Source of the DNA: Salisapilia sapeloensis CBS 127946
Lineage: Eukaryota; Protista; Oomycota
Length of the DNA stretch: 64,000 bases
Reading direction: 5' to 3'
Assembly (NCBI GenBank): GCA_023334545.1
Contig: JAADVB010000018.1
Location: 67,233-131,232 of the forward strand
The position numbers and the translations under genes were made by a program. Below are positions 7,690 to 27,896 of the stretch, piece by piece. The notes beneath the pieces were generated by a model, which ran no database searches, was not told the DNA's origin, and was given only the letters and a program-made list of their open reading frames with translations. The stretch's first letter is position 1, and each line of letters opens with the position of its first letter.

Positions 7690-8182
7690 CTTTAGAATGT
7701 AGATGTGTAGTTGATGAAAGGCGGGAGTGCACCTCTAGGAGATGCTCGAGCGTGGATATGACGGTGGTCGAAACGAGGAAGAGGTAGGACACGGAAGCTC
7801 TCTACCCGACGACAAATGCGATCACTGGGTCGAGCCCAGTCTGCAAGTTAGAAAAGTTACTTATTGCCGATAGAACGCGTTATTTCGAGACGATTGCAGC
7901 ATTTTGTATGGTCGGTCAGTATAATAGCGACCATTTGACAACTGCATAGGTTAACGGTTAGGTGTACGCGAAGACTTGACTGATTAAGGTTTCGGTGCCT
8001 GTGCTGGACGCAGGTCCATGAACCTGCGTACCTCTGAGTAGATTGATGCCATTATTCCATTCCTAGTAGAGTCGTACGGTGTGTGCAGAAGGGCGACAGC
8101 ACTCACAATCTAGCGAGCATTGGTTACGAACCAGTATTAGTTTTCGATCTTGGAAGGTCGCTTCCAGTCGCAAATCCTACAG

Positions 8183-11100
8183 ATGCCGAAGCGTACATCG
8201 CACGCGTGTGCTGTTGTCTTGTTCGCGCTCGTTCTGAGAAATGTGTTTGGGACACTATCCGATGTGACTATCGCTCCTAATGACGATAGCGCTGGTATCA
8301 CCGGGACCATCTCCATCACGTTTGTATCCGATCTATCCATTGCTCTTGACAGTGAGCTTTCCATCCTCCTTCCTACAGGCTTTGAAATTGCAAGTACAGC
8401 AGCAGCATCTCCTGATAATAGCAACTCCGACGGGACAACATTGTCAGTTGTCTCTCAAGCGTCTACTTCTTTGCGATGCAAGATCGAGACAGCGGCAATT
8501 TCTTCATTTACAGCTTTTGCTTTCGATGTCACGGACGTCACGAATCCAGCCGAGGGATCATGGCAACCGACGACGTTGATTCTATACGATAGTGAAGGCA
8601 TCGAGTTGGATCGAACCAGTTTTATTCCAGCCATCGACATCGTCTTGACGCCATTCAGTTCTGTAGCCACTGCGCTGGACACAACGGATGCAGGTGCGAC
8701 AGGAGCAGCCTCGATATCCTTTACAACAGATGTAGCTTTAAAGATTGGTAGTAAGATCGTAGTCGTTTTTCCAGCAGCATTAGCACTTCAACCAACAGAG
8801 GTGACGCCCACTAGTAGCATTTTAGACTCATCGAGTACCTTGTCCTATCAGGCACCGTCGACAGCAACTGTTGTCATCCAAGGCACAGATATTTCGGCAG
8901 GTGAAGACGTGTCTTTCTCGTTAGATGGTATCACGAACCCAGGCGAGAGTTCCTTGGCAGACTTCGTTGTTACATCGACGGATGGATCGAATAAGATCTA
9001 CCAACGATCTCCTGTTGCTGGTGGAGACATCACTAGTACAGAGTTAACTGATGTCCATTTAGTCAGTACATCTCTTCTTGCAGGTACTCCTACAGCATTC
9101 ACGATAGAATATACGTCTAAGGTGCCAATACCAGTCAACGGCATGTTTGTACTTAGCTTACCGACAGATTATAAGCTTGATGCCTCGTCTTTTGTGCTGT
9201 CAGATAGTAATAGTGGTGACTCGATAAGCGGCATCTTGTCTTCCCAACTGATAGTGTTTCCTTTCGATGCTGCTGTGGCATCTGGGGCACAGAGCTTTAC
9301 CCTGGAGCAGGTGTTCAATCCTAGTGCCCGTACCACAGACACCTTTATGATGTGGACAGCAGATGCAAATGGATTGCTGTTGGAAGTAGCTGTTGGGATC
9401 AACGGATTTGAAATTGCCGCTGGTACGATTTCAGATGCACACTTTCAACCGCAACGTGCGAATCCTGGTCTAGACTCATCCGCTACGCTTACGTTTACCA
9501 CTTCTGCTCGACTAGTACCTGGCAGCTACTTGCAATTGTTCATACCGCAAGATGATTATAAACCAGTAGGAAGTGGACTATTCGTAGATGTACAGACTCC
9601 TTCGTCAATCACAGCTACGATTACTTGGGATACAGGAGCGTCTAAAGCTGTTATAAAGATTACTGGACCCAATACTATTCCACCAGGAGCTGACGTTACA
9701 ATATCTTTATCTACTTTCCAAATGCCTCCATCCGTCCGTGCGGCAACATCTACAGCTTCAATTGAGAGTTATGACGCGTCTGATCTAGCTTTAGATGCAT
9801 CCAGTGTTGTAAACATGGCTGAAATTGAAGCCGTGACCATCCTCAATTGTGTCTGGACGACATTTTCGCCCAATCCAGGCATATTATCGAGCGTTGAGAT
9901 TGTATTTGAAACTAGTGGTCGTATCCCTGCGTCTGGAGCTGTTAAAATATTGTTACCTAGTGATGACTTTAGTGCTGCTGTTGTCGAAAACGCACCGAGT
10001 ATAACATTTATCTATCCGTCCAATATGACAGGAACAGGGTCGTTTGATGCGGATCTACATGAATTGGAAATTGTTCTAGATGAGGAACTGCCGAGGCTTG
10101 GTACCGTCAAACTACAAGTAGCGACACTGAATACACCATGGTCGGTTCGATCGGCGAATCGATCCGGATCAACGTTACGGACACTTGACACAGTAGGAGT
10201 GACCATCGATGGACCAAGTCTACTGCAGCTTGATGCTATTCAGCCAGGGCCATTATTAGGTGACCGATTGTGGACGTCAAGTGAGCCGTATGCAGGTATC
10301 ACAAGCGATCAAGAAGTGACGTGGATGAACCACGGTCAGCTCTCTGTTGGCAGTCGCATTGAAATCACGCTTCCAGTAACTGGATGGAGTGCGAGTGAGA
10401 TTTCGACCGTAGATCTCATCTCTCCAAACATTGGATTAACGTTTAGTTATGCCTTTGATCTTCCGACACGAACACTAACATTGACAATTGATGGATCAGT
10501 GGATCTACCGTCTAATTCTGTCATTCTGTTACAATTTCCAGGTGTAAAAAATCCTCCGAATGAAGTCGGCAATACAAAAGCAAGCGTCACTACGTTTGCA
10601 CCGGACGGCATTGCCGTAGATGGACCCGATACGATTTCCATTCGACCGATTGGGGTCGGGCAGATAACAGGTGTGAAGACATTGACAAGTGTGAATAATG
10701 CGGCGAGTATGGCGAGTGACCAGGAAGTACGTGTGACGTTGAATGGTGCACTTGCATCTGGGGGCTTTATCTATTTTATTTTTCCACAGGATGTAGGATG
10801 GAGAGCTCTAACACTTCCATTAGATGTTCAATTTAGTAGTCCACCAGATATCACAGCTACTTCTGTCGAGTGGACTGCAGCAGAGTGTGAAGTACGCATT
10901 GAGATCGATGGAAACATACCGGAGCGAACAGATATTGAGGTGGTAGTTAAAGGATTGGCAAATCCGTATCAGATACATGGCACGTCGTTGCTTACTGTCT
11001 TGACGAAAGTGTCAACTCGATTGGCAGTAGATGCATCAGATAATATAGTTATTAACTCCATATCAAGTGGAGAGTTACCTAGTGGAGCAACATGGACATC

Positions 11101-14100
11101 GACTATTGCTACGCCAGGCGTATCATCTACACATATCTTGTCGTTGACAACTGCTGGTGAGATGTTGGAAGAAGCTAGTATTTGTCTTTCTTTCCCAAAG
11201 ACAGACTCGTGGGTGTTCCAGTCTATGAACAATGCTAAACTAACTGATGAAAGCACTGGTAAGACCGATACAACACAGGCGTTGTGGTATGCATCTCGGA
11301 AAGAATTGTGCGTCATGATCGTCTCTACTATCAAGCAAGAGACGTCAATTATAGTTGAGATCATAGACGTCGTATCGCCCATGTCTGTTCGTTCGGAAAC
11401 AAATAGAAGTATGAAAGCTGTGGGTCATCTAGAAGGTGACATTGCTTCTGGGACGTATACTCTCAATGCGGTTACAGCAGGAGAGCTTACTGGAAGTCTA
11501 AGTTGGGAGTCGGCGTTTTATTCTCCGGGTGCAGTGGCAGGTCTGAGAACAAGCGCAACCTTAATGTTTACGACGATAGGTGCGATCCCAACCGGTAGTG
11601 CTGTGGTACTCACACTACCCGTCGAATGGAAATTACTTCCTGAATGCTTTGTTTCTCGCATGCTGCCACCGCTTTCTGTGTCTGCGTTATGTAGTGACAA
11701 CATTTTAACGATCTTACTGGAGAATGATGTGAATGAAGGACAAGCGATAGAGCTTGAGCTTAATGGAGTTATAAATCCACCTACGACACAACCTGCTGGT
11801 ATTGCAACAGCCACGAGTTATGCTTCTGATGGAGGTATAATCGATCAGTCCATCGCTATAACAACGAATGCGATTGTGAGTCAAGTGACGGATATCCAAA
11901 GTGCTGGAGACGTTCGTGTGGCTGTTCGAGGTGTCGAAAAGGTATTTACTTTCGTCGGTGATAGCGTTGCTTCTCAAGATATTGTCAAGTTCATGCCATT
12001 TGATACATCGAGTGATACGAACTGTGGAACGTTTACGTCAGGTATGTCAGATGCAGGTGGGGTGACGATACAATACCTCGATTCGAAACTTTCTATAGCA
12101 CTGACATTCGGTGTCTCCTCTATCGATGGACAGCCTTTTACGATCTGCTACAAGCACGGATCAAATCCTTTTCGATTATACAGTAGCTTTGCATTCTATG
12201 TTAAAGAAGTAAAAGAAATTGTTGTAAATGAAGGATTAGCATCATTAGCAGTCTCCAACTACATCAAGAACTGGAGGATAGTCGGCAATGGACTTGCAGA
12301 TGGAGACTCTATCCGATGGATCGATCTAGATATTGTAAACGCTGCAATCTCTATAGAAGATGTAGATTGCTCTGATACGAATCACTTGGCTGTTTTACTC
12401 GGTGATGATAATCCACTACCTGGAGAAGATGACTACACGAGGGTGCTAAATAGACCTCTTTTCGAGTCTATGTATGCTTTTACAGAAGCAGACGCTGGGA
12501 AAACGTTTTGTCTTTGCATGAAATTCGGACAAGAACCTTTTACTGTATACCCGACTCTGCAGGTTAGAGTAAATCATGTGAGCGATATGACTGCCGCTGT
12601 CATGGGTAGCAACGATGTGGTCGTAGCTGATGCGACGAAACGCTTCTTATTGCATGGACATGGGCTCAAACAAAGTCATCGCATCTTTTTCATCGAAAGT
12701 GATGGAGCTGAGGACTGTCATCTAGCTTTCAACGATGAAACGAGGAGACTACGTCATTACTTTGATAATCAGTACCAGACTATACTCTACCTTGATGCAG
12801 ACCAAGCCTTCGATGTTCATTTTGACAGTGCTGATGCTGGAAAGTGGGCGTCTCTGTGCTATGAATTCGAGAATGAGCCCTTTCAATATTACCCGAGTCA
12901 TTCTGTATACATTCATGGCGTTTCTGGCTTTAGTGGATCATTAGGAGAACCTGACTTTGCTGTTGCGCATGTACCAGAGCCACTCACCTACTTTGGTTTT
13001 GGACTGCATGAAGGAGATCAAGTTCGATGGGTCGCAAATGGGCAGAGTGACTGTGAGACGAACTTTGGAAAGCTTGTGGCAAGCGATACATCCGTCGTGT
13101 TTGAAACGACGACGTTAGATTCAGACTCTAGTGCCAGCTTTAACTTTTCATCTGATCAAGTCGATTATAACCCTGTCCTTTGCTACAAGTTTGGGTCGGA
13201 AGAATATAAATTGTATGAGCAACTGACGATATCGATTGGAACGATCAAACGTAAGGTTGCAACTGTCGGAGAGAAAGATGTGGCAGTCACGCACTATCGA
13301 AAGCTATTTGCGTTACAAGGTGAGAATACAGCAAAGGGAGATCGAGTCGCTTGGACGTTTGATACGTCCGTTAATTCCTGTGATGACTTGGCACAACAGA
13401 ACATAGACGCAGAGACAGGTGATGGACCATTGCTGGCGTATGTCAATGATGATCTGTACGTCGGAGTGAACTTTATCTCTGCCGTGTCAGGACTTCGAGT
13501 CTCTCTATGCTATGGCTTTGGCACGGAGCCATTGAAACTTTATTCTAACCTTCAGGTACGCGTGAAAAGCGTTAAGGGCGTCTTGGCAGGACGAGGAAGT
13601 CCGTCGATTGCTGTTGTCGGAGCTCCTAAGTCACTAGAGTTTAGAGGCGACGGGGTGAGTACTGGTGACTTTGCAAAGTTCGTCGCGCAATCACCGGATG
13701 GATGTAACCAGCCTGGTGTGTCTTTGATAGACATTGCAAAGGAGTATGATCGATACGATGATATGGCTTTGTATTTATATCAGACGATGGCAGGCGTCAC
13801 TAGTGCTAGTTTTAACTTTGTCGATGATGATATGACGCCAGGTGAACAGCGCGTACTGTGCTACTCGTTCTCTGGGAAAGAGCCGTACTTTTACTATGAA
13901 GATTTTGTCATTGATATACATACTGCTCGTGCTTTCGAATATGCTGAAGGGTATGCCTTTGGTGATCCTTCTATTGCTGTCGCACGTGAAATAAAAAAAG
14001 TTGTACTCACTGGCGTGGGTATCACTCAGCATGATGTGGTAAAATTCATATCATCTACAGCTGCATCTGATCAGGATTGTCTTGACTTTCCACCGATGGG

Positions 14101-17100
14101 GATGTCTTCTGATGTGACAGTAGAGGAAGACGGTGTGATCACCTTGGCATTTGATCACGGATCTAAAGACACCGCCTGGCGTCTTTGCTATCGAACAGGC
14201 GATGAGCCTTATCGACTCTTTCCATCCATGACCATGGAAGTAAAGGAAATAACTAATTTCCTCGACTACTTGAACCCTAAATCGACAGTGCTTAGTCGGA
14301 TGGCGACGATCGGGCATGAAAAAGTATGGCAACCTATAGGCTCAGGTATCTCTGCTGGGGATACAGTAAAATTCGTATATAGGACTGTCGTCTCAAGCGA
14401 TGCTTGTGGTGGTACAAGTGCGAATATGGTACTAGGTACGACGATGATGACTGTGTCAGCAGAACACCTTACATTTACAGGTCTCTTTACGCAGTATCCG
14501 TCCGTCCTGAGTGATGCGTATCATATTTGCTATCAATTTCAGAACGAACCATTTGCTTACATTCCAAACTTTGATATCAAGACGTTCGGTATTAAGGGTA
14601 TTGATAGATCTACGATCTTGGCACAGGCGGCGACGCTTATACGCGTACAAGGCTTTCGTATAAGTAGTGACGATCAACTCGCATGGACAAAGACAGAATC
14701 TTGTGCAGATGCATTTAAAGTCTCGAATGTCGTAGACACAGAAGCTGTCGTGCAGTTTGACACGGTGTACGACGAGCTCTTCCTTTGCTATAGTTTCAGT
14801 AGACAACGATGGGAACGTTTTGATAGTATTCGGCTATCTGTAGTGCAAGCTGATATCTGGGTACCTTCTGTCGCGACGATCGTAGCGCAGCAAGAGGAGG
14901 TCATTGAGGTGTCTGGAACGTTCGGATTGACGATGGGTGAGAGTAGCTTGGCATGGATCCCAGCTGACGCATCCGCGTGCAGTGAGAGCTTAATGGATGC
15001 GTACGCAGGTATTATGCAAAGCTCTATCGTAGCTTCCGTAGCTTCTTCAACATCCGTCGCACGATCCGGATCGTCTGTCTTCCGCGTCAAGTATGAAGCT
15101 CCAGGTGCGGAGACAACAGAAGGTATAACAGGTGCGAATATTGGTGTCTGGAAGCTTTGTTTTAAATTTGGCAGCATGTCGAGCACTCTTTTATTCGACG
15201 ACGTCCTCTGTGAAGTCTTGAACGTTTATGATGTGAGCTTAGTAGCTCGTGACACGACGTTAGGTGGTACCACCATGACGTTCCAATTCAAGGGAGTTGG
15301 ATTAGAAGATATGGATATGGCAAAGTGGGTAGCTGCATCAGACGTCGTTAGTGATGAAGACTGTGAGACAGCGCCTCCGCTTGGTGAGAGCGTGGAGTCT
15401 GCTGTGCTTAATAGTAGAGCGACGTTCACCTTCCATGACGTAAATACAGATATGGCTCTCTGCTATTTATTCAAAGGACACAGCTACAAACTATATGCAG
15501 GTCTAAATGTCCGCGACGCGACATCGGCTTCATCCGTGTCGAGTGTGCAGCGTGATCTTTCAGCTACGACTGAAGAAGAAAATCATCTTGATGCAGTGGA
15601 AAGTGAACAGATACATAGAAGCTCACAAGCAGCCACAGTGCGGTTGAGATTAGATAGAGATATAGACTTGATACCACCAGGATCGGATGCTGAAGCTACG
15701 TTCAAGACCGACTTTATCTCTGCTTTATCTATAGCCTTAGACATTCCTGCTTCTAGAGTAGTTATAAAGCAGATCACAAGAGGATCGGTTATTGTCGAAT
15801 TCGACATCTTGCCATCCGATAACGTTGCTGACCCTCTTGCAAACGAAGTAGTACAGTCTATAGCTAGTGAGCTTGAAGATCCTCAGGGCACACTAAAAGA
15901 CAACGCTGTGATGGCGGATATTGATACCCAGGATGGTCTTCAGACGATATATTATTTTCTAGATATCGAAGAGAGCACGCCGAAGCCGTTCAAGTCTGTT
16001 CCTTACCAGCGCAAGGGTCTGTTCACGTTCGTCCAGCCTGTATATAGCATTACAGAAGAGTCCAGTACGCTTAGTATTCCTATCATGCGACTTCATGGTA
16101 CGAACGGCATGGTCACCGTGCCGATTGATATAGACTATAGTGGTATCGGTTCGGCAACGTTCGATGAAGATTACTCGATCGTAACGGATTTAAATGACGC
16201 AGGTCGACGTAGATTCGTTCGTTTCGATGCTGGAGAGAAGGTCAAATACGTAGATGTAGTGGTAGCGAATGATAGTATGGTGGAAGCACACTTTGAAAGC
16301 TTCGAGATAACGCTTCAGACACCAGAGGCGCTCCAGACAGCTTTAGGAGATATCTATACAACCACCATTCGGATATATGATTCACGTCAAGGAGAAGTAC
16401 TTGCTTCATCTACATTTGGTAACTCTGATCCACAAGGCTGGAGTGTTGTTGGGAATGGAAATGACGCACACTTGCGTGTTAGTTCCAATGGGATCTTTGC
16501 AGTGGACAACAGTGTCGGTGAAGGGGAGTATAATGAGAAATGTGATGCAGCCTCCCCGACTGGCTCATGCTCGTATACATGTACTTTAGGCGGAAATATC
16601 TTACACGGTAGTGGATTGAGCTCCCCTTACAATTCCTTACTACTGGACGGAGATGATTACGCCGTCAGCACTAGCGAACTATCCTCCTTTCCGACAAAGG
16701 TACCTTCTCTATCTCTACATCATGCTCATATTTACTTATTCTGGTTGGTTTTAGGAGTTTACTCTGTCGCTGTGGGTCAAGACAACTTCGACGTCGACGG
16801 ATAATTGTCTATTCTCCTACTCGATCGTTTCGTCCACAACTCCTCTCGTAGCTTTGGCAATCTGCAATCCATCCAACCTTCAAATCTACATCAATGCTCA
16901 CAACGATTTGGATGGTCTGACAACGTTTGTAAATATTTCGGATGGTGCATGGCACTTTATTGCGCTTGAATGGGATTCACAAGACGGACGAGTATACTTG
17001 TTCGATAACGCCTTACTAGTCTTTGACGGAGGGCCTTATCATGGAGGTATGCCTCTGCACTCAGCGCGCGGTTTATTAATTCTTGGAGCTCTGGTGCTAT

Positions 17101-17903
17101 CTGGATCAGAACCTTACTGCACAAACACGATGAATGAAAGTCTGGAAGGAGATAGAATTGAAGTATCCTGTGACATCGTACTTGGCTCTGGGTTCCGTGG
17201 TGAGCTTCAGCACTTGCATGTTTGGAGTAGAGCGTTGTCGTTATCCGAACTACGAAGGGAAGTGGCTTGGCCGATGCAAGTGACTTTAAATGGTCTCGTC
17301 GTTGGATGGAACTTCGATCGCCCGCATCTGCTCGACGATGGATATCACGTGAATGATATCACGACTACGGGACAGCAAGCAAAACATATAGGCTATATTT
17401 ATTGTTCAACATTACTAGGATCCAGTTCTTGCTTTTCGCAAGGCAGCGTGCCATCTCTATACTCTCCAAGCTTTCCTTGCGGCCCAGTGTATGCCAACCT
17501 CTGGCACTTTTCCGCTCCAGAGTACTTTGTCCAGCAATTAGCTTTTTCCTACGGCGGCAGACTGCAGTACAAGATGCTCGCTCCTAGCTACAACGGAAGG
17601 CCTCGACCTAGAAGAGGCCAAATCTCACTCTTTGCATCCGATGGAACGCATCTCTCTCGATCGTTAGGGAGTTTCCAATTGCCTTTAGCATCATCTTGGA
17701 CGTATTACTCTGTTATACTACGAGAGGACTTTGCTTGGATTCAAGAACCCGCCGGTACGTCCGTTAGTACAGAGACATTTCGACACGTCCTAGAGACAGC
17801 TTCTAGCTTATGGATACGAGGGGACCTATGGGGATCAAGTACGTCTGGATTAGGACAAGAAGTAGTCTATCTAAATGACGTCATCCTACATGCACGACCG
17901 TAA
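8183..17903 (+). CDS. Giant secreted repeat protein A (about 3,221 aa): signal peptide, 9 Ig-like repeats, 11 Cys-pair repeats, SEA-like, Calx-beta, laminin-IV split by a pentraxin/LamG domain; intron 16700-16754
   Basis: 8.5-kb open frame. The intron AAG|GTACC...TTTTAG|GAG restores KEFTLSLWVKT (pentraxin) and joins ORF 16854..17903. Calx-beta GLFTFVQPVYSITEE...FVRFDAGEKVKYVDVVVAND; laminin IV WHFSAPEYF...SYGGRLQY...LWIRG. No C-terminal TM seen. Confidence 0.85.
8256..11880 (+). repeat. 9 tandem protein repeats of about 130-140 aa (beta-rich, Ig-like) in protein A
   Basis: Recurrent pattern [AP]G..s...i.FtT...l..Gs.i.l.lP..[FWY]...l..v.NP, e.g. DAGATGAASISFTTDVALKIGSKIVVVFP, NPGLDSSATLTFTTSARLVPGSYLQLFIP, NPGILSSVEIVFETSGRIPASGAVKILLP. 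Confidence 0.75.
11890..15520 (+). repeat. 11 tandem protein repeats of about 110 aa, each with a Cys pair, in protein A
   Basis: Recurrent G.G[LIV]..GD.[VI].[WF]...C...F...LCY.FG.EP[FY].LY, counted 11 times. Confidence 0.8.
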
Positions 17904-17966
17904 CACGTACAAACTTTATGATATTTCAGTCAAACAAATTGTCTTCTACTTGTATTCGCGAAAGAA

Positions 17967-20458
17967 TTAGCAAGCAATGCAACCACAAAATAGTTTCTGC
18001 TTCGGTGGCTGCGGGTCCATGTCGCCTGCTTCGACAGTTTGTCCAGCATACGAGCTCTCGACTCCACATAGCGTCGCGTGTAGGGACGCTAGTGTCGTGT
18101 TTTCATGGTATAATATCTCTTCCGGTACTTGGACTTGGTACTTTTGGTTGATGATCCCTTGAAGCTGCGTCAGTGCCATCGAATCCATGCCCATTTGCTG
18201 CAAAGGAGTCTCTGCTCTAATGTTTGACTCTTCGACTTGCAATTGCTCCGCCAGTTCCGATCGTAAAAAGTTGAACACTTCATCCGGTGAAGCGTTCGAA
18301 ATGACATGCGCCATAGATGGATTCGTCGGGGCAGGAGGCGGCTCAGTACCTCCTTGCTCACCACTGTCATTGTCATCCTCTGAAAAGCTTCCAATCATGT
18401 CTTCATTACGATAGATCTCGTCCAATTCCTTCATCATCATGGCTTTCTTACATCTCGAACGCGAGATCTTCCCGCTCGTCGTCTTTGGAATCGTACGTGG
18501 TTTTACAAGGATGATCAACGTGACTTGAACACCATGCTCTTTCGAGATAGCAGACCGAATTTTACCACACAAACTAGCTTTATGCTGGATCGAAGGGTCT
18601 CGCAACTCACTTACAATCGCTAGTTTCTCACTATCATCCTCATCTCCTGGACTCGAGTAAGAGAACGCAGCTGTGCAGCCTGGACGTAGCTCTTCATGAT
18701 TTTCACTCGTCGCTTCGAGGTCTTGTGGGTAGTGGTTTCTACCTCGAATGATCACGAGATCTTTCATTCGACCACAGATGAAGAGCTCGTTCTTGTACAT
18801 GACACCGAGATCTCCAGTGCGTAGGAAGCGATCGCTCGAATCGGACAATGCGGCATGGAAGGTCTGGTCCGAGATCTCTTTCATCTCGTCGCCAAAGTAG
18901 CCTTGTGCCACTGAGTCACTGGAAATCCAGACTTCACCGACATGACCGTCCTCTACTTGGACACTTTCTTCTGAATTAACGATCCGAACGTCGATACCAT
19001 GATCTTTCTTCGAAGGTACACCACACCCGACCATCTCCTTACCATTCTCCGGCGCATTTACTTCTTGGATCTGATTATGTGTTTCTAAAGTTACTGGATC
19101 AACGTATAGAGTCTCTTTTCCACCGCCACAGACGTAGACTGTATGTTCTGCTAGTCCATACGTCGGTTTAATCACGTCTTCCGGTAGTCCGTAGGGCATA
19201 AAAGCCTTATAGAACGCACTCATCGCTTCCTTCTGAATCGGTTCAGCGCCATTGATCATATGCCGGACACTAGACAAATCGATTTGCTTATCTCTTAGAT
19301 TCGCAGTTTTCCGAGCACACAAGTGGTAAGCAAAGTTTGGTGCTTGGAGGTGCGTTGCTTTGTGTTTTGAAATGAGTTCAATCCATAGCATCGGATTCTT
19401 AATGAAAGAGAAAGGAGAAAGGTAGACGCCTGTGCCACCATTAAAGATTGTGCCGAGATACGCGCCGATGAGACCCATGTCATGGTATTGTGGTAACCAG
19501 GAGACGACGACTGTGTCTCGACCGGCGTGGAGGGCGGAGGTAATGCTTTTTAAATTGTGATTCAAGTTTGCATGGGAAAGCACGACTCCTTTCGGAGCAG
19601 ATGTACTTCCGGAAGTGTACTGAAGGAAGGCAGTGTTGTGGGTATCGACTTCTGGGATGGCAATGTCGATGGATTTGGACGTGAGATTGTCCGACACGAT
19701 CCATTTCAGGTCCTCTGGCCACGGGAGGTTGGCTGAGAAAGATACCTTTTGCTTAATTGCAGAGATCTGCTTCACGTGGTAGTAAGTCGATGTGGTCAGA
19801 GCGATCGACGGCTGGCAGTTTTGAACGACTGCGACGAACATATTAATATCTTTCTTCATCTTTCGTGGATCTATACGAATAGAGGTTTAGTATATAGGAT
19901 AAGACGATGGTGTAGAAGGGATGAACCTGGAGGATAGACTGGAACGGCTACGACGCCAGCTCGTAGACAAGCCAAGAAGGCGACGATGAATTCGAGACCA
20001 GGAGGATAAACGAGGACGACACGATCCCCTTGCTTTAAGCCGAGACTAATATACGAGGTCTATTAGGCTGTCAAGTAGTAGTTTATGCTTGTATTGTACC
20101 CTTTCGGATGGTCCGAGGCAGGAGTGACGAGAAGCGCTGCTAATGTCTGGACTTGTTTGTTTAAATCCTACCATAGACAGCGAGAATATTGAGCTATACA
20201 ATGGAAGGAATGTATATGATAAATAGGTACCGAGCATGTGAGGGACGAGGTGGTTTTGCCATTGTCGTCGACGAACGTCAGGAGTGTCTATACCGAACAC
20301 CATGTCAAATTAGCTTTTTCCATCCTTTTACTCTGAACTAAACACAGAGGTTTCGCTAGTAACTGCTAGAGTCATGCAGCAATACACATGTAGCTTTAAC
20401 GCACCTTGGATGGTGTCTCCGTGGCCCAAGCCTCTAATCGCTGGAGTAGTTCCGACAT
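17967..20458 (-). CDS. Fatty acyl-AMP ligase (FAAL-type adenylation domain) fused to a C-terminal acyl/peptidyl carrier domain; introns 20288-20404, 20168-20230, 20046-20099, 19871-19926 (733 aa)
   Basis: FLQYTSGSTSAPKGV, SWLPQYHDMGLIG, YGLAE, LRTGDLG, GRMKDLVIIRGRNHYPQDLE, PKTTSGK. Carrier motif MGMDSM. The reconstructed N-terminus MSELLQRLEAWATETPSKTLLTFVDDNG...GDRVVLVYPPGLEFIVAFLACLRAGVVAVPVYPPDP is frame-consistent across all four introns. Confidence 0.9.
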
Positions 20459-20698
20459 ACTCGAATCGGAATGCTAGAATGGGTGCGAAGCTGACTTCCC
20501 ACACCACTTGGGTTCAGTATGGTCGAACGTCTGTCGAAAGTGTAACTGCTACGTTTCAAAAAAGTTATAATTAGCCGCATCTGCGGACACTTATCTTCGG
20601 ACTCTATCTACTGCCGATCTACGTCCACTTTCCCATCCACCTTTGTACCTTTAGCTCACGTATACTAGTGGGAAGGTATCGAAAGAGGCTGAGTCAAG

Positions 20699-22302
20699 AT
20701 GGTACTAACGGAGAAGCAACGACAAGACTTGTACGTAGTGCTACGTTGATTTAGAACGGACATTTGTATGCACCGTGAAGGAATGATCTTGTTCATATGC
20801 TTTTGGAATGATAGACATCAATCGATATTGGCGTATATGACTTCCATGGGTGATCAGTTCCATGCTTCTGTTGTGGCGTTTGCGAAAGAAGCAGGCTTGA
20901 ATCCAGACAAACATCGTACGTGTCGAAAATCACCATTTCAACGAGTCTTGCGTGGTACTGACATGTTCATGTGTGACTTGTATAGCTGCAAACAATGCAA
21001 CAGGGACGCTAGAAAAAAAATGGACTAGTGTCATCCGATTACAGCGCAAAGTCATGGAGTTAGAGCAGGAGGTACAATACCTAAGTGAACAGTCGAAACT
21101 GAATGGAGTCATCAGTCGTCGAGATGTCCTCGGTGCCAACCAAAGGGAGCTCCTACCTCATTCCCCCGCGACATTCTCCTTGCAAGCTCATCGAGGCCCC
21201 ATTACAGTACGTAGTGACCTCCTTATGAGCGTCTACGGAGGCTCCTATCGGGTTGAGTACTAAAGTATGCTTGGTAGGACGTTGCTTTCCATCCTGTGTT
21301 TAGTATCTTTGCATCTGCAAGCGAAGACGCGACGATCAAGATCTGGGATTTTGAGACGGGCGAGTTTGAACGGAGTTTAAAAGGACATACGAATACCGTC
21401 CACGGTCTTGCGTTCAATCGTTCTGGTACTTTGTTAGCTTCTGCGTCGTCTGACATGAGCATCAAGATCTGGGACTTCCATTCTGATACACGGTATGAAT
21501 GTCTACGTACGCTTCGAGGTCATGATCATCATGTCTCTTGCGTCCGTTTCTCTCCTTCTGACGAGACCGATCGATTGTACTCGAGTAGTCGAGATCAAAC
21601 GATTAAAGAGTGGGAAGTATCTACTGGCTTTTGTGTTCGAACGATAAGTACGAACGATTGGATACGTGACTTGAGTGTCAGTGACGATGGCAAGTACTTG
21701 TCTGGAGGTGGAAATGACCATCAGATCGACGTGTACGAGACGAGGAAGTGGAGTGTGATGCAGACTCTAAAGGGACATGAACATGTCATTGAGTCCGTCT
21801 GCTTCGCATCGAATAAAGTAGCGAAGCAGATATCCAAGTTGCATTCGAAACAACTATCAGGTGCCCATGACGCGCACTTCGCGTCGGAGGAATCGCCAAC
21901 GATCGAGGAAGGACGGTATCAAGATGATGTACGAGAGAATCAGTTCGTCTTAACTGCTTCGAGAGACCGGAGCGTTCGGTTGTGGGAAGTGGTGCATGGT
22001 ACGCTCTTGATGACGTTCACGAGTCATGAGAATTGGGTCAAAAGCGCGAGGTTTCATGCCAGTGGCAAGTACGTGATCAGTATTGGCGATGAAAGGACGA
22101 TCCGAGTGTTTGAGATTGAGGTAGGCCGTGTACTGTAGTAGGAATGGTAGGATACTGACGTTGGATGTAGACAGGAAGATGCGTTCGGACGTTAGATGAG
22201 GTGCATGACCACTTGCCAACGGCATTGGATGTCCATCCGACCTTGCCGTTGGTCCTTTCGGGTGGATTGGATCACTTGGTGAACGTGTGGGAGTGTGATT
22301 AA
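20699..22302 (+). CDS. LIS1: Lissencephaly-1 homolog (LisH, coiled coil, WD40), multi-exon
   Basis: [11 protein letters not shown]..., [72 protein letters not shown]-like [18 protein letters not shown]. The last exon ends LVNVWECD*. Confidence 0.93.
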
Positions 22303-26228: not shown

Positions 26229-27896
26229 TTATACTGGAGATCTACCTTCATGGAAACTCTTGAGTTCCGTGACACGGACGAATCGATGGTAGATCAGCGG
26301 ATGAAGCTGACTCAATCGCGTCGGGTGCTCCGCGAAGCATACAAATAACGTCTTAATCACTCCACCAACGAGGTGCACAGCAATGGCTACTGCACTATAG
26401 CTCGCAACGAATGTGATGCCAGATACTAGTAGTGGCATGTCGACTTGAGTACCCATAGTTAAAAGAGCGATGGTTGCAATGAGACCGGCCCACCCATTGG
26501 AAATAAAGAAGAGCGATCGACTTGTTAGATCATCATCGACAATCGCTTCCACACCTCTTGCTTGCATCAACTGCCACGTATCATGTGCTGCAGCGTAGAA
26601 TGGTTTGGAGTACCCCGCGATATGAGCGAAAGAATACTTGTGGTAGGACTTGATAAGGTGTTCTACTCGAGACGATCGAAGCCACGAGTACTTTTGTCGG
26701 ATGGAAGACTCGTCTCGAGTCGCCCATCGAAGTACATTCCAGATGAAGTGGGAGAGCGGACAGATCAACGATCCGATGCAGATGGACCCAAAAGATGTTG
26801 TGAGGGAGCACCGGAAGTAATGGAAGACGACGTGGCGATTCATAGAAGTGGGTTTGTGGAACCACATAGAGGATGGTGCTTCCTCATCTTCTGGTGGATC
26901 GATGTGGTCTGATACTTCAAGAGTGTCATCAGGTGACTCTTCTTCCTCCACTGCTTCGGTTTTGTTGTACCAGATCATTGTTGTGCCTGCTACGACGACT
27001 GTGACGATATTTTTAAAGACGTTGGACGTCCAGTAGAAGTGAAAGTAGAGGTAGAGCATGCTGACTGAAAGAGGAGACACGCCATGGTCTGTGGTGATGG
27101 CTATGGTCGTACAGAGCCAAGAGACCCAAATCGTGTACACAACTAATACACCTGTGGATACAACTAGTAGAGCAGTATGGTCTAGTAGGACGTCCGTCAC
27201 GAGATCGAAGAGGACGGCGACAAAATCGAAACCGGATTGGAACTTTACTTTCCATCCGAAATCGACTAGCACAACAAAGACGCCGATAATACCAATCGCA
27301 AGGGCTTCGTCACTAGTGTCAGCCGAGAGGAGAGATATGGTGAAGGATAAAAGACCGATGGAAGAGAAGGCGGTGGAAACGACGATTAATCGCTTCTTGC
27401 GACTCAATAAGAAGATCAGTTGCCATGTAATAGTAAAGAGGAGGCTCAAGACGGACAGCCAATGGAAGATTAACGCAATGGAAGAAGCGTCGAGAGTTGG
27501 GAGAGCTCGATCATCTACTTCGACTTGGCCGAGTGGTATTTCGGTCTCGATGGTAGTAGATACTTTTGACCGTTCTGGCAGAGAACGAATGTTTTTGGTT
27601 GCGAGGACTGCAATGATGATGTGAAGGATAAAGAGAAAGGTATAGACTTTATCACGGTATGTAGCTGGAGATGTGAGTGTCGGGAGAGGCCGATTGCCCT
27701 TGGGACTAGCTGCAGAAGATGGCAATAAATGGTCCTTGTCTTCGATGCTATCGTCATCTGTTGTCATTATGACAGTCGGAGGTAGTGTCAAGTTCTGTAG
27801 AGCCGACCGCGGTGTCTGCACAGCTACTGGAACATCGTCCGTGACCTTTAGAACGTCCTTGTCGTCATACTCGTGAACATCCTCCGAGTCACTCAT
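26229..27896 (-). CDS. Choline transporter-like (SLC44/CTL/PNS1) membrane protein
   Basis: About 10 TM segments; FYWTSNVFKNIVTVVVAG, SFGSICIGSLI, YSFAHIAGYSKPFYAAAHDTWQL, TLFVCFAEHP. Confidence 0.88.
   Translation of the reverse strand: MSDSEDVHEYDDKDVLKVTDDVPVAVQTPRSALQNLTLPPTVIMTTDDDSIEDKDHLLPSSAASPKGNRPLPTLTSPATYRDKVYTFLFILHIIIAVLATKNIRSLPERSKVSTTIETEIPLGQVEVDDRALPTLDASSIALIFHWLSVLSLLFTITWQLIFLLSRKKRLIVVSTAFSSIGLLSFTISLLSADTSDEALAIGIIGVFVVLVDFGWKVKFQSGFDFVAVLFDLVTDVLLDHTALLVVSTGVLVVYTIWVSWLCTTIAITTDHGVSPLSVSMLYLYFHFYWTSNVFKNIVTVVVAGTTMIWYNKTEAVEEEESPDDTLEVSDHIDPPEDEEAPSSMWFHKPTSMNRHVVFHYFRCSLTTSFGSICIGSLICPLSHFIWNVLRWATRDESSIRQKYSWLRSSRVEHLIKSYHKYSFAHIAGYSKPFYAAAHDTWQLMQARGVEAIVDDDLTSRSLFFISNGWAGLIATIALLTMGTQVDMPLLVSGITFVASYSAVAIAVHLVGGVIKTLFVCFAEHPTRLSQLHPLIYHRFVRVTELKSFHEGRSPV

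What the first reader, a model, noticed from the sequence alone, without database searches (positions are those of the whole stretch)
17967..20458. Stand-alone FAAL-acyl carrier didomain ending in a Cys-rich CaaX-like tail: a possible membrane-tethered, CoA-independent acyl-transfer system
Seen: FAAL-type motifs (WLPQYHDMGL, YGLAE, and an insertion TLYVDPVTLETHNQIQEVNAPENGKEMVGCG at the position of the FAAL-specific insertion); an acidic linker; a carrier domain with the phosphopantetheine Ser (GMDS, codon 18182-18180); and the C-terminus KLFCGCIAC*. The last four residues, CIAC, fit a CaaX box, with an upstream Cys available for palmitoylation. Known: bacterial FAALs reject CoA and load fatty acids onto ACPs of adjacent PKS/NRPS. 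No PKS, NRPS, reductase or acyltransferase is fused or nearby. Inference: a prenyl-anchored acyl-ACP generator delivering acyl chains to an unknown membrane acceptor (lipid, protein or signalling lipid) in an oomycete, a pathway I do not recognise as described.
Basis: partly seen in the sequence, partly recalled or inferred. Interest (0 to 1): 0.78.

Follow-up and report, generated by a model that had tools for sequence, protein, structure and literature searches.

The report
Lipid-tailed fatty acid activating enzyme
This water-mould gene makes an enzyme that activates fatty acids onto its own built-in carrier arm instead of coenzyme A, and it ends in a strictly conserved cysteine tail that probably pins it to a membrane, pointing to an undescribed lipid-making route shared with diatoms and their relatives.

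Summary
On the minus strand, 17967-20458, lies an expressed five-exon gene. Transcript contigs from three runs match all four introns and end about 50 nt after the stop. It encodes a 733-aa fatty acyl-AMP ligase (FAAL) fused to a carrier domain.

Sequence, profile and fold searches all place it with solved FAALs, not CoA ligases. The published CoA-rejection residues sit at the expected positions.

The tail KLFCGCIAC is not chance. It is identical or nearly so in 32 of 32 peronosporalean-type orthologs, after a variable linker. Of 122 family members, 99 end in a canonical CaaX box; all named members are stramenopiles. Most of the rest have Cys clusters with basic runs.

A nested sister clade lacks the tail. 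It carries instead a transmembrane hairpin and a DGAT2-type acyltransferase fused after the carrier domain.

Best reading: a cytosolic, lipid-anchored, CoA-independent acyl-ACP generator feeding a membrane acyltransferase. Prenylation of the oomycete tail itself is unproven, because Saprolegniales have the Cys at -5. The acceptor is inferred only from the fusions.

No PKS, NRPS or acyltransferase lies in the window.

Surveys list FAALs in oomycetes and diatoms. I found no paper on the tail or the fusions.

The scan noted this same stretch twice, in overlapping windows of this genome, not on other DNA.

The parts
17917..20491 (-). Extent of the mRNA: about 30 nt of 5' UTR, five exons, about 50 nt of 3' UTR
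   Evidence: Single transcript contigs of 2281 nt (X1), 2285 nt (X2) and 2236 nt (X4), 100% identical, lie on 17917/17936 to 20461-20491 with four joints
20405..20458 (-). Exon 1, from the ATG at 20458 (residues 1-18)
   Evidence: joint 20287|20405 in transcript contigs
20231..20287 (-). Exon 2 (residues 19-37)
   Evidence: joints 20287|20405 and 20166/7|20230/1
20100..20167 (-). Exon 3
   Evidence: joints
19927..20045 (-). Exon 4 (holds GDRVVLVYPPGLEFIVAF..., the start of the adenylation core)
   Evidence: joints 20045|20100 and 19870|19927
17967..19870 (-). Exon 5, including the TAA stop at 17969-17967 (residues 100-733)
18390..20458 (-). FAAL adenylation domain, N- and C-terminal subdomains (residues 1-593, spliced)
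   Evidence: Pfam AMP-binding 4e-48 and PF23024. PDB phmmer gives Legionella FAAL 1e-85 and FadD32 3e-74 against CoA ligases at 1e-15 or weaker. NCBIfam FAAL models reach 1.5e-105 against 6e-38 for FACL. The top 30 Foldseek hits are all FAALs
19470..19499 (-). WLPQYHDMGL. W224, P226 and M231 correspond to the EcFAAL residues that block the CoA pocket and line the alternative pantetheine tunnel
   Evidence: Residue numbers coincide with those given for EcFAAL in PMC8460268. The residues are invariant in 48 family members
19392..19418 (-). SPFSFIKNP: the FAAL-specific helix (residues 251-259)
   Evidence: Same positions as the EcFAAL FSH, R251-P259. Predicted as a helix in the model (exon-5 numbering 152-157). 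Near-identical to the Legionella FAAL sequence SPFSFLQNP
19326..19343 (-). APNFAY, with F279 (the bulky residue at the base of the canonical CoA pocket)
19020..19112 (-). FAAL-specific insertion between motifs A5 (YGLAE) and A6
   Evidence: Aligns with the matching stretch of Legionella FAAL with only short gaps. A5-A6 spacing is 74 residues. The model shows it structured (strand 253-256, helix 258-264, strand 277-281)
18315..18389 (-). Acidic, Pro-rich flexible linker (residues 594-618)
   Evidence: pLDDT below 50 over exon-5 residues 493-519; sequence
18063..18293 (-). Carrier (ACP-like) domain. The phosphopantetheine Ser663 codon is 18182-18180
   Evidence: Pfam PP-binding 46.7 bits. The Ser column is conserved in 119 of 122 and invariant in A1. 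Four-helix bundle with pLDDT 84-97; the Ser sits at the start of helix 563-577
18003..18062 (-). Variable, disordered spacer between the carrier domain and the tail
   Evidence: 30-55% column conservation; pLDDT about 32
17970..18002 (-). Basic, Cys-rich C-terminal tail KQKLFCGCIAC. Cys726, Cys728 and Cys730 (the -4 position), with Cys733 last
   Evidence: The last 9 residues are 84-100% conserved in 32 orthologs. Cys -4 is invariant in A1. 99 of 122 relatives end in CaaX

Best explanation
An expressed nuclear gene of a peronosporalean-type oomycete encodes a soluble, cytosolic 733-aa protein with no signal peptide and no transmembrane segment.

Proposed mechanism:
1. The FAAL domain adenylates a free, probably long-chain, fatty acid.
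2. Its canonical CoA pocket is blocked, so it passes the acyl group to the phosphopantetheine arm on Ser663 of its own fused carrier domain, not to CoA.
3. A roughly 30-residue floppy spacer then leads to a basic, Cys-rich end (KQKLFCGCIAC). This is lipid-modified and holds the loaded carrier domain on the cytosolic face of a membrane. The likely modification is prenylation at the -4 Cys and/or S-acylation of the neighbouring Cys residues.
4. There it hands the acyl chain to a membrane-bound acyltransferase. The most likely partner is of the DGAT2/MGAT type, giving a CoA-independent route from free fatty acid to a neutral lipid or glycerolipid.

Shown here: the gene and transcript structure, FAAL-clade membership, an intact carrier domain, strong position-specific conservation of the tail, and the existence of FAAL-ACP-DGAT2 fusions in a nested sister clade.

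Inferred: rejection of CoA, pantetheinylation, the kind of lipid on the tail, which membrane, and the identity of the acceptor.
For: Gene and transcript. Four introns are confirmed by 100%-identical transcript contigs in three runs from two samples of one study, and the contig ends about 50 nt after the stop.

FAAL membership:
- PDB phmmer gives 1e-85 to 2e-58 for solved FAALs, against 1e-15 or weaker for CoA ligases.
- The ten best NCBIfam hits are nine FAAL/FadD or related models plus one model named long-chain-fatty-acid--CoA ligase (NF005850, 2e-93), at 1.5e-105 to 6e-66. The next CoA-ligase model is at 6e-38.
- The AF2 model (pLDDT 83.8) has FAAL structures as its top 30 Foldseek hits, including the olefin-synthase FAAL with stearoyl and palmitoyl adenylate.
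- W224, P226, M231, helix 252-258 and F279 sit at the positions published for the E. coli FAAL CoA-rejection elements. They are invariant in the family.

Carrier domain: Pfam; Ser conserved in 119 of 122.

Tail:
- 32 of 32 peronosporalean-type orthologs end [K]L[FLV]CGCI[AS]C.
- 63 of 63 ochrophyte 'GCPPG' type relatives have Cys at -4.
- Overall 99 of 122 end in canonical CaaX. The others have CGC ends or Cys clusters followed by Lys/Arg runs.
- Within each clade the distance of the Cys from the C-terminus is fixed, as expected for a prenyltransferase signal.
- The tail is disordered and follows a variable spacer.

Acceptor:
- At least six FAAL-ACP-DAGAT fusions, two of them from named species: P0056 from Chattonella subsalsa and P0180 from Chromulina nebulosa; the others are P0139, P0148, P0156 and P0165. 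DAGAT scores reach 3e-39.
- Additional ACP-DAGAT proteins or fragments: P0290 and P0292, which carry carrier-domain sequence ahead of the DAGAT domain.
- The fusions lack the Cys tail and have a two-helix hydrophobic hairpin instead.
- They form one clade (SH-aLRT 99) nested inside the Cys-tail family.
- P0165, P0148, P0290, P0292 and P0293 keep the PHG, GGIAE and RKGF..A..TG..VP..FG motifs.

Parallel in the literature: the FAAL-like domains of opisthokont DIP2 are needed to move DAG species into TAG (PMC9342972 abstract).
Against: - No biochemical or localisation data exist for any member.
- The oomycete CaaX is atypical: a2 is Ala and X is Cys.
- All six Saprolegniales orthologs end CCGCIAIR or CCGCIRIR, with the Cys at -5. 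The shared oomycete core is therefore CGCI[AR], not a strict CaaX.
- The DGAT link is by fusion in a sister clade, not in oomycetes.
- Several fusions (P0056, P0139, P0156, P0226, P0248) have lost the catalytic His of the HPHG motif. In those the DGAT-like part may be only an anchor.
- No oomycete stand-alone relative of the fused DGAT domain was recovered, though that search is limited by its word index.
- No conserved gene neighbour points to a partner.
- The substrate chain length is not determined.
Confidence: 0.6

Rival explanations
1. Same enzyme and membrane tethering, but the oomycete tail is not prenylated. The CGC/CCGC cysteines are S-acylated by DHHC enzymes, or even self-acylated from the protein's own acyl-pantetheine arm. 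Together with the upstream Lys residues they give a reversible anchor.
For: The motif shared by both oomycete branches is CGCI[AR]. In Saprolegniales it is followed by two residues (CIAIR/CIRIR), so there is no Cys at -4. Other family members carry Cys clusters followed by polybasic runs that cannot be CaaX: P0088, P0100, P0144, P0158, P0163 and P0283. Ala at a2 and Cys at X are unusual for prenyltransferase substrates (general knowledge).
Against: The distance of the Cys from the C-terminus is fixed within each clade: -4 in 32 of 32 peronosporalean-type sequences and -5 in 6 of 6 Saprolegniales. S-acylation alone does not require that. 99 of 122 relatives have textbook CaaX ends. From memory, not checked here, five-residue C(x)3X ends have been reported as farnesyltransferase substrates.
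Confidence: 0.25
2. The protein is a classical loading didomain for a PKS, NRPS or fatty-acid-modifying enzyme encoded elsewhere in the genome. It would make a specialised lipid or signal rather than feed a DGAT-type acyltransferase, and the tail only places it next to that partner.
For: All characterised FAAL-ACP didomains (HapA, NocH, AmbG) prime PKS/NRPS or related machinery (PMC11837247). The nearest non-family relatives are FAAL modules of multidomain synthases. Eukaryotic genes need not be clustered. A survey reports FAAL-NRPS architectures in Oomycota (PMC12820801).
Against: No such gene lies in the 64-kb window or beside the Pythium oligandrum ortholog. The family is conserved as a single stand-alone unit across oomycetes and ochrophytes with very different secondary metabolism. 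The only recurrent fusion partner found within the family clade is a DGAT2-type domain.
Confidence: 0.1
3. The Cys-rich end is not a lipidation site. It is a metal-binding, redox or protein-docking motif, and the protein is soluble.
For: Three to four Cys residues lie within eight residues (CGCIAC). No experimental evidence of lipidation exists.
Against: The Cys pattern is not conserved as a ligand set across the family: single-Cys CaaX, CC, CGC and CPCLLLCC patterns all occur. The segment is predicted disordered, at the extreme C-terminus, after a variable spacer. Replacement of the tail by a transmembrane hairpin in the fusion clade argues that its job is membrane attachment.
Confidence: 0.04

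Closest known systems
Bacterial FAAL-ACP didomain proteins (HapA of hapalosin, NocH of nocuolin A, AmbG of ambruticin; reviewed in PMC11837247)
   Same: The same two-domain architecture, FAAL then a fused carrier domain. The FAAL has its specific insertion, and the acyl group goes to its own carrier instead of CoA.
   Different: Those proteins are encoded inside PKS/NRPS gene clusters and prime an assembly line. They have no C-terminal Cys tail. This one is a spliced eukaryotic gene with no synthase nearby and a conserved lipidation-type end.
Solved FAALs: Legionella pneumophila FAAL (3KXW/3LNV), Synechococcus olefin synthase FAAL domain (7R7E-G), mycobacterial FadD32, FadD23 and FadD28, E. 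coli FAAL (3PBK)
   Same: 33-36% identity in the structural alignments (29-30% for E. coli FAAL), TM-score by target 0.6-0.76. The same insertion, FAAL-specific helix and pocket-blocking residues W224, M231 and F279.
   Different: They are stand-alone enzymes or the N-terminal domains of megasynthases. None has a fused ACP followed by a lipidation tail.
E. coli Aas (acyl-ACP synthetase / 2-acyl-GPE acyltransferase; NCBIfam NF006386)
   Same: It works alike in outline: a membrane-associated AMP-forming ligase puts free fatty acid on ACP and couples this directly to an acyltransferase, bypassing CoA.
   Different: It is not the same clade (NF006386 scores only 3.8e-25). Aas is an integral membrane protein with an AGPAT-type domain fused at the N-terminus, and it uses free ACP.
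DIP2 (opisthokont tandem FAAL-like protein; PMC9342972)
   Same: A eukaryotic protein with FAAL-type domains, and the Pfam DIP2-like C-terminal AMP subdomain also hits here. It is functionally linked to converting DAG species into TAG. This echoes the DGAT2 fusions in this family.
   Different: DIP2 has a DMAP1-binding domain plus two divergent FAAL-like domains, no carrier domain and no Cys tail. The stramenopile proteins are classed as the 'bacterial/plant' FAAL type.
FAAL-ACP-DGAT2 fusion proteins of ochrophytes (P0056 Chattonella subsalsa, P0180 Chromulina nebulosa, P0165, P0148 and others)
   Same: FAAL and carrier domains are 43-46% identical to the window protein. They form one clade with the Cys-tail proteins.
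   Different: After the carrier domain they carry a hydrophobic hairpin and a DGAT2-type domain instead of the spacer and Cys tail. I found no published description.

Membership tests
Fatty acyl-AMP ligase (FAAL) clade of the ANL superfamily | ANL core motifs (A3 P-loop, A5 YGxxE, A7 TGDxG, A10 Lys) | tested here: met
   YTSGSTSAPKG 184-194, YGLAE 337-341, TGDLG 451-455, TSGKISR 564-570. Pfam AMP-binding 4e-48.
Fatty acyl-AMP ligase (FAAL) clade of the ANL superfamily | Scores with FAAL models and structures well above acyl-CoA ligase models | tested here: met
   NCBIfam FAAL models score 354-223 bits. One model named as a CoA ligase (NF005850) scores 313.5 bits, and the next CoA-ligase model scores 130 bits. 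PDB FAALs score 1e-85 to 2e-58 against CoA ligases at 1e-15 or weaker. The top 30 Foldseek hits are FAALs. The curated whole-protein cut-offs were not reached, because the query lacked the first 100 residues and the models are bacterial.
Fatty acyl-AMP ligase (FAAL) clade of the ANL superfamily | FAAL-specific insertion between A5 and A6 | tested here: met
   Residues 353-383 align to the insertion of Legionella FAAL with only short gaps. A5-A6 spacing is 74 residues. The insertion is structured in the model.
Fatty acyl-AMP ligase (FAAL) clade of the ANL superfamily | CoA-rejection elements: bulky residues in the canonical pocket, FAAL-specific helix, Pro at the tunnel mouth (Patil et al. 2021) | tested here: met
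   W224, P226, M231, helix 252-258 followed by P259, and F279 sit at the positions given for EcFAAL. They are invariant in 48 relatives, and the helix is predicted. The mapping is by identical spacing, not by a printed alignment to 3PBK.
Fatty acyl-AMP ligase (FAAL) clade of the ANL superfamily | Forms acyl-AMP and loads holo-ACP but not CoA | not testable with these tools
   Needs an enzyme assay.
Phosphopantetheine carrier (ACP/PCP) domain | PP-binding profile above the curated cut-off, with Ser in the (L/M)DS motif at the start of helix II | tested here: met
   46.7 bits against a cut-off of 20.8. GMDS has Ser663, and the column is Ser in 119 of 122. Four-helix model with pLDDT 84-97.
Phosphopantetheine carrier (ACP/PCP) domain | Converted to the holo form by a PPTase of the same organism | not testable with these tools
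   The genome cannot be searched as a whole. The scan's notes hold no PPTase entry.
CaaX prenylation substrates | Cys exactly four residues from the C-terminus of a cytosol-exposed protein | tested here: met
   The protein ends CIAC then stop, and the transcript confirms this end. No signal peptide or transmembrane segment was found; the only hydrophobic stretch is the adenylation core.
CaaX prenylation substrates | Aliphatic a1 and a2, and an X residue typical of FTase (M, S, Q, A, C) or GGTase-I (L, F) | tested here: inconclusive
   a1 is Ile, a2 is Ala (small, not favoured) and X is Cys (accepted by FTase according to textbook lists, which I recall rather than tested). Ochrophyte relatives have textbook ends: CVIL, CTIL, CVIQ, CVVM, CAIM.
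CaaX prenylation substrates | Motif kept at -4 in orthologs | tested here: inconclusive
   It is kept in 32 of 32 peronosporalean-type and 63 of 63 ochrophyte 'GCPPG' sequences. All 6 Saprolegniales orthologs have the Cys at -5 (CIAIR/CIRIR).
CaaX prenylation substrates | Carries a farnesyl or geranylgeranyl group | not testable with these tools
   Needs metabolic labelling or mass spectrometry.
Loading didomain of a PKS/NRPS gene cluster | PKS, NRPS or tailoring genes adjacent or fused | tested here: not met
   No such domain occurs in any large ORF of the window or beside the Pythium oligandrum ortholog. The mRNA is stand-alone.
FAAL-ACP-DGAT2 fusion proteins | DAGAT (PF03982) domain after the carrier domain | tested here: not met
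   The window protein stops 31 residues after the carrier domain. It is a sister form, not a member.

The most novel reading that the evidence does not exclude
Stramenopiles (oomycetes, diatoms and other ochrophytes) run a cytosolic, CoA-independent acylation pathway. A lipid-anchored FAAL-ACP activates free fatty acids at a membrane and feeds them as acyl-ACP directly to DGAT2-type acyltransferases. In some lineages the two are fused into one polypeptide. The products would be triacylglycerol or another neutral lipid. This would be a eukaryotic acyl-ACP-dependent lipid assembly route outside plastids and mitochondria.
Probability: 0.3. Interest if true: 0.8.

Novelty: new variant of a known kind. 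Interest (0 to 1): 0.64.

Why it matters
FAALs are known as bacterial devices that keep fatty acids away from CoA and commit them to special lipids. Their role in eukaryotes is open, even for DIP2.

Here a whole family combines the FAAL with its own carrier and a membrane-targeting lipidation tail, or in a sister clade with a DGAT2-type enzyme. The family is conserved from crop-pathogenic oomycetes to diatoms, which are of interest for oil production.

That gives a concrete, testable scheme for a CoA-independent acyl-transfer route in eukaryotic cytosol. It supplies a fusion-based (Rosetta-stone) hint about the acceptor. It also identifies a conserved single-copy gene that could be knocked out in Phytophthora or Phaeodactylum to look for the lipid concerned.

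It may also help explain how FAAL-like proteins such as DIP2 influence DAG-to-TAG flux.

Tried and rejected
1. Conserved gene neighbourhood as a clue to the partner. The window neighbours are a calpain, a papain-like protease, a giant laminin-like secreted protein, LIS1-type WD40, a katanin-like AAA protein, a choline-transporter-like protein, PRPP synthetase, GCP, RCC1-BTB and FYVE. The Pythium oligandrum ortholog sits among FYVE, Band_7 and PI3/PI4-kinase genes. There is no shared or lipid-related neighbour.

2. A search for stand-alone oomycete relatives of the fused DGAT domain (P0165:770-1127). It gave 13 hits, none from oomycetes. The closest named proteins are apicomplexan DGATs at 38% identity. 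The word index limits this search, so the blank is weak evidence.

3. A first search for more fusions with P0056 residues 640-1053 found only one further protein. The exhaustive representative search was needed to find the others.

4. Literature searches for CaaX or prenylation together with acyl-AMP ligase, DGAT2 with AMP-binding and phosphopantetheine, FAAL in Phaeodactylum, and NRPS-like genes in Phytophthora, plus two recent reviews of diatom and stramenopile TAG metabolism. Nothing was found on this family.

5. The scan's own notes for a PPTase or a prenyltransferase in this genome. None is recorded; there are only other CaaX-ended proteins.

6. A chimeric-assembly explanation for the DGAT fusions. 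I rejected it because the architecture recurs in at least six clusters at or below 60% identity, from different sources and two named species.

7. A transmembrane segment in the window protein. The only hydrophobic stretch, residues 69-97, is the conserved core of the adenylation fold.
Full report
**1. What is there**

The minus strand between 20458 and 17967 carries a five-exon gene: 20458-20405, 20287-20231, 20167-20100, 20045-19927 and 19870-17967. All introns are GT-AG, and the product is 733 aa.

Public runs X1, X2 and X4 (one organism, two samples, one study) are transcript assemblies. Each holds one contig of 2236-2285 nt, 100% identical to the window. These contigs lie on 17917/17936 to 20461-20491 and skip exactly the four predicted introns, read as CT..AC on the plus strand.

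The mRNA therefore has about 30 nt of 5' UTR and about 50 nt of 3' UTR, and it is not spliced to any further domain. A second organism (X5, about 93% identical) shows three of these four joints; no X5 contig spans the 19870|19927 junction.

**2. Domains**

Pfam finds AMP-binding (4e-48), the DIP2-like C-terminal AMP subdomain, and PP-binding (3.9e-12, 46.7 bits against a cut-off of 20.8).

Against solved structures by sequence, every strong hit is a FAAL:
- Legionella FAAL 3KXW/3LNV: 1e-85
- Synechococcus olefin-synthase FAAL domain 7R7E: 2e-84
- FadD32: 3e-74
- FadD23: 6e-65
- E. coli FAAL 3PBK: 2e-58
- CoA ligases begin at 1e-15.

The ten best NCBIfam hits run from 1.5e-105 to 6e-66. Nine are FAAL/FadD or related models and one (NF005850) is named a long-chain-fatty-acid--CoA ligase. 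The next CoA-ligase model scores 6e-38.

I built an AlphaFold2 model of the last-exon product (633 aa) with a 48-sequence family alignment. Its mean pLDDT is 83.8. Both adenylation subdomains and a four-helix carrier domain are confident. The acidic linker and the last 28 residues have pLDDT below 50. The top 30 Foldseek matches in the PDB are all FAALs (4e-46 to 1e-35, TM by target 0.6-0.76).

**3. FAAL-specific features**

Patil et al. 2021 (PMC8460268) name the elements that make FAALs reject CoA:
- bulky W224, M231 and F279 in the canonical pocket
- a FAAL-specific helix (T252-R258, drawn as R251-P259)
- conserved prolines such as P226 at the alternative pantetheine tunnel (all in E. coli FAAL numbering).

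In the full-length window protein the same numbers hold W224, P226, M231, the stretch SPFSFIKNP at 251-259, and F279. The helix is predicted in the model. These residues are invariant in the 48-sequence alignment.

It lies in a 74-residue A5-A6 interval.

The mapping to E. coli FAAL rests on identical spacing, not on a printed alignment. I consider it sound because the flanking motifs are invariant.

**4. Relatives**

The word-index search returned orthologs at 50-66% identity from across the oomycetes (Phytophthora, Nothophytophthora, Peronospora, Hyaloperonospora, Bremia, Pythium, Globisporangium, Lagenidium, Aphanomyces, Saprolegnia, Achlya, Thraustotheca). It then returned diatom and other ochrophyte proteins at 41-45%. 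The window's own organism is thus an oomycete of the peronosporalean type. In the tree it groups with Phytophthora boehmeriae on a longish branch.

An exhaustive HMMER search of 1.84 billion representatives added further short relatives, followed by FAAL modules of large PKS/NRPS proteins.

I built a maximum-likelihood tree of 67 rows (quick search, SH-aLRT support only). It puts all short eukaryotic proteins in one clade (support 98), apart from the multidomain modules.

**5. The tail**

*Oomycetes.* Thirty-two peronosporalean-type sequences, the window included, end K-L-[F/L/V]-C-G-C-I-[A/S]-C. Counted from the C-terminus these nine positions are 84-100% conserved. The twenty before them are 30-55% conserved and vary in length. 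All six Saprolegniales orthologs end CCGCIAIR or CCGCIRIR.

*Ochrophytes.* Sixty-three ochrophyte sequences end G-C-P-P-G-V-x-C-a-a-X with the Cys at -4 in every one. The ends include CVIL, CTIL, CIIL, CVIQ, CVVM and CAIM.

*The whole set of 122*:

| End type | Count |
|---|---|
| Canonical CaaX | 99 |
| Cys at -4 with non-aliphatic neighbours | 7 |
| Saprolegniales form (Cys at -5) | 6 |
| Ends in CGC | 2 |
| Cys cluster (two followed by a Lys/Arg run) | 3 |
| Evidently truncated gene models | 3 |
| Fusions (see section 6) | 2 |

The representative search added more Cys-rich ends, such as CPCLLLCCPK plus polybasic runs, FPCCFCCY, CGC, CVVS, CTVS and CAMM.

*Reading.* The carrier Ser is kept in 119 of 122. 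A disordered, extreme C-terminal, basic and Cys-rich motif with a clade-fixed distance to the end is the signature of prenylation and/or S-acylation signals. The variety of Cys patterns speaks against a metal site.

The protein has no signal peptide or transmembrane segment. The tail would therefore meet the cytosolic lipidation enzymes.

**6. A clue to the acceptor**

At least eight relatives at 43-46% identity to the window protein lack the Cys tail and continue after the carrier domain.

Six have a Pfam DAGAT (DGAT2/MGAT family) domain:
- P0056, from Chattonella subsalsa
- P0139
- P0148 (6.5e-30)
- P0156
- P0165 (3e-39, nearly full length)
- P0180, from Chromulina nebulosa.

P0226 and P0248 have a homologous but more divergent extension.

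In P0056 and P0139, the two fusions scanned, a hydrophobic hairpin of about 40 residues lies between the carrier and the DAGAT domain. ACP-DAGAT proteins or fragments (P0290 and P0292, which carry carrier-domain sequence ahead of the DAGAT domain) show that the arrangement is common.

In the tree these fusions form one clade (support 99) nested among the Cys-tail proteins.

P0165, P0148, P0290, P0292 and P0293 keep the PHG, GGIAE and RKGFxKxALxTG..VP..FG motifs of active DGAT2 enzymes. P0056, P0139, P0156, P0226 and P0248 have lost the His.

My reading is that the lipid tail and the membrane-embedded acyltransferase are two ways of bringing the loaded carrier domain to the same kind of partner. 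This is inference from domain fusion. It is not shown for oomycetes.

**7. Context**

No large ORF of the window encodes a PKS, NRPS, reductase or acyltransferase. The Pythium oligandrum ortholog has unrelated neighbours.

**8. What is known**

- Patil et al. list Saprolegnia and Achlya proteins as 'bacterial/plant FAAL' in a supplementary table.
- The FAALPred paper counts 121 FAALs in Oomycota and 2.9 per diatom genome (PMC12820801).
- A 2025 review states that FAALs occur in stramenopiles (PMC11837247).
- The words 'prenyl' and 'membrane' do not occur in the FAALPred paper, and my searches of the other two surfaced no lipidation tail or DGAT fusion.
- Searches combining CaaX or DGAT2 with these domains found nothing.
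- Two recent reviews of diatom and stramenopile TAG metabolism do not mention the family.
- The FAAL-like domains of opisthokont DIP2 are required to redirect DAG species into TAG (PMC9342972). This is an interesting parallel.

The enzyme class in these organisms is therefore catalogued. The membrane-anchoring tail, the absence of a synthase partner and the DGAT2 fusions appear to be undescribed, as far as the held library shows.

**9. Verdict**

The FAAL-ACP nature and the stand-alone status are firm. Lipid anchoring is strongly suggested by comparative evidence (I put it near 0.75). Prenylation of this particular CIAC end is about even odds against S-acylation. A DGAT2-type acceptor is a lead (about 0.35).

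It is a new variant of a known kind.

Noticed in passing
window 20565-20900 and on to about 22138 (+ strand): The divergently placed neighbour is a LIS1-type WD40 gene. It has a confirmed 84-nt GT..AG intron (20730|20815). Its transcript contigs have much higher nominal depth than the FAAL gene's.
   Followed up: partly
P0056, P0139, P0156, P0226, P0248 (relatives, not in the window): Some FAAL-ACP-DGAT2 fusions have lost the His of the HPHG motif while keeping the rest of the DGAT2 fold motifs. These are possible pseudo-enzymes that serve only as membrane anchors or acceptor-binding modules.
   Followed up: partly
window 8150-17903 (+ strand): A giant ORF (2884 aa plus a 349-aa continuation) with Laminin B and LamG-like hits at its end converges on the 3' end of the FAAL gene. 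The stop codons are only about 60 nt apart, and the transcript contigs overlap at 17917-17925.
   Followed up: partly
window 34383-45455 (+ strand): A 3690-aa uninterrupted ORF. Its first 1500 residues have no Pfam hit at E<=1e-4.
   Followed up: no
window 26229-27896 (- strand): A choline-transporter-like (CTL/SLC44, PF04515) gene lies 6 kb from the FAAL gene. It is the only other lipid-related gene in the neighbourhood and is not conserved beside the Pythium ortholog.
   Followed up: partly
run X5 laid on window 18021-20900: A second organism, about 93% identical at the DNA level, carries the same gene with three of its four intron joints seen. Most listed differences are transitions spaced at multiples of three, as expected under purifying selection.
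   Followed up: no
P0298, P0299 (Hammondia, Besnoitia): The closest named stand-alone relatives of the fused DGAT domain are apicomplexan DGATs (38% identity). Apicomplexa are also listed as FAAL holders in the surveys.
   Followed up: no
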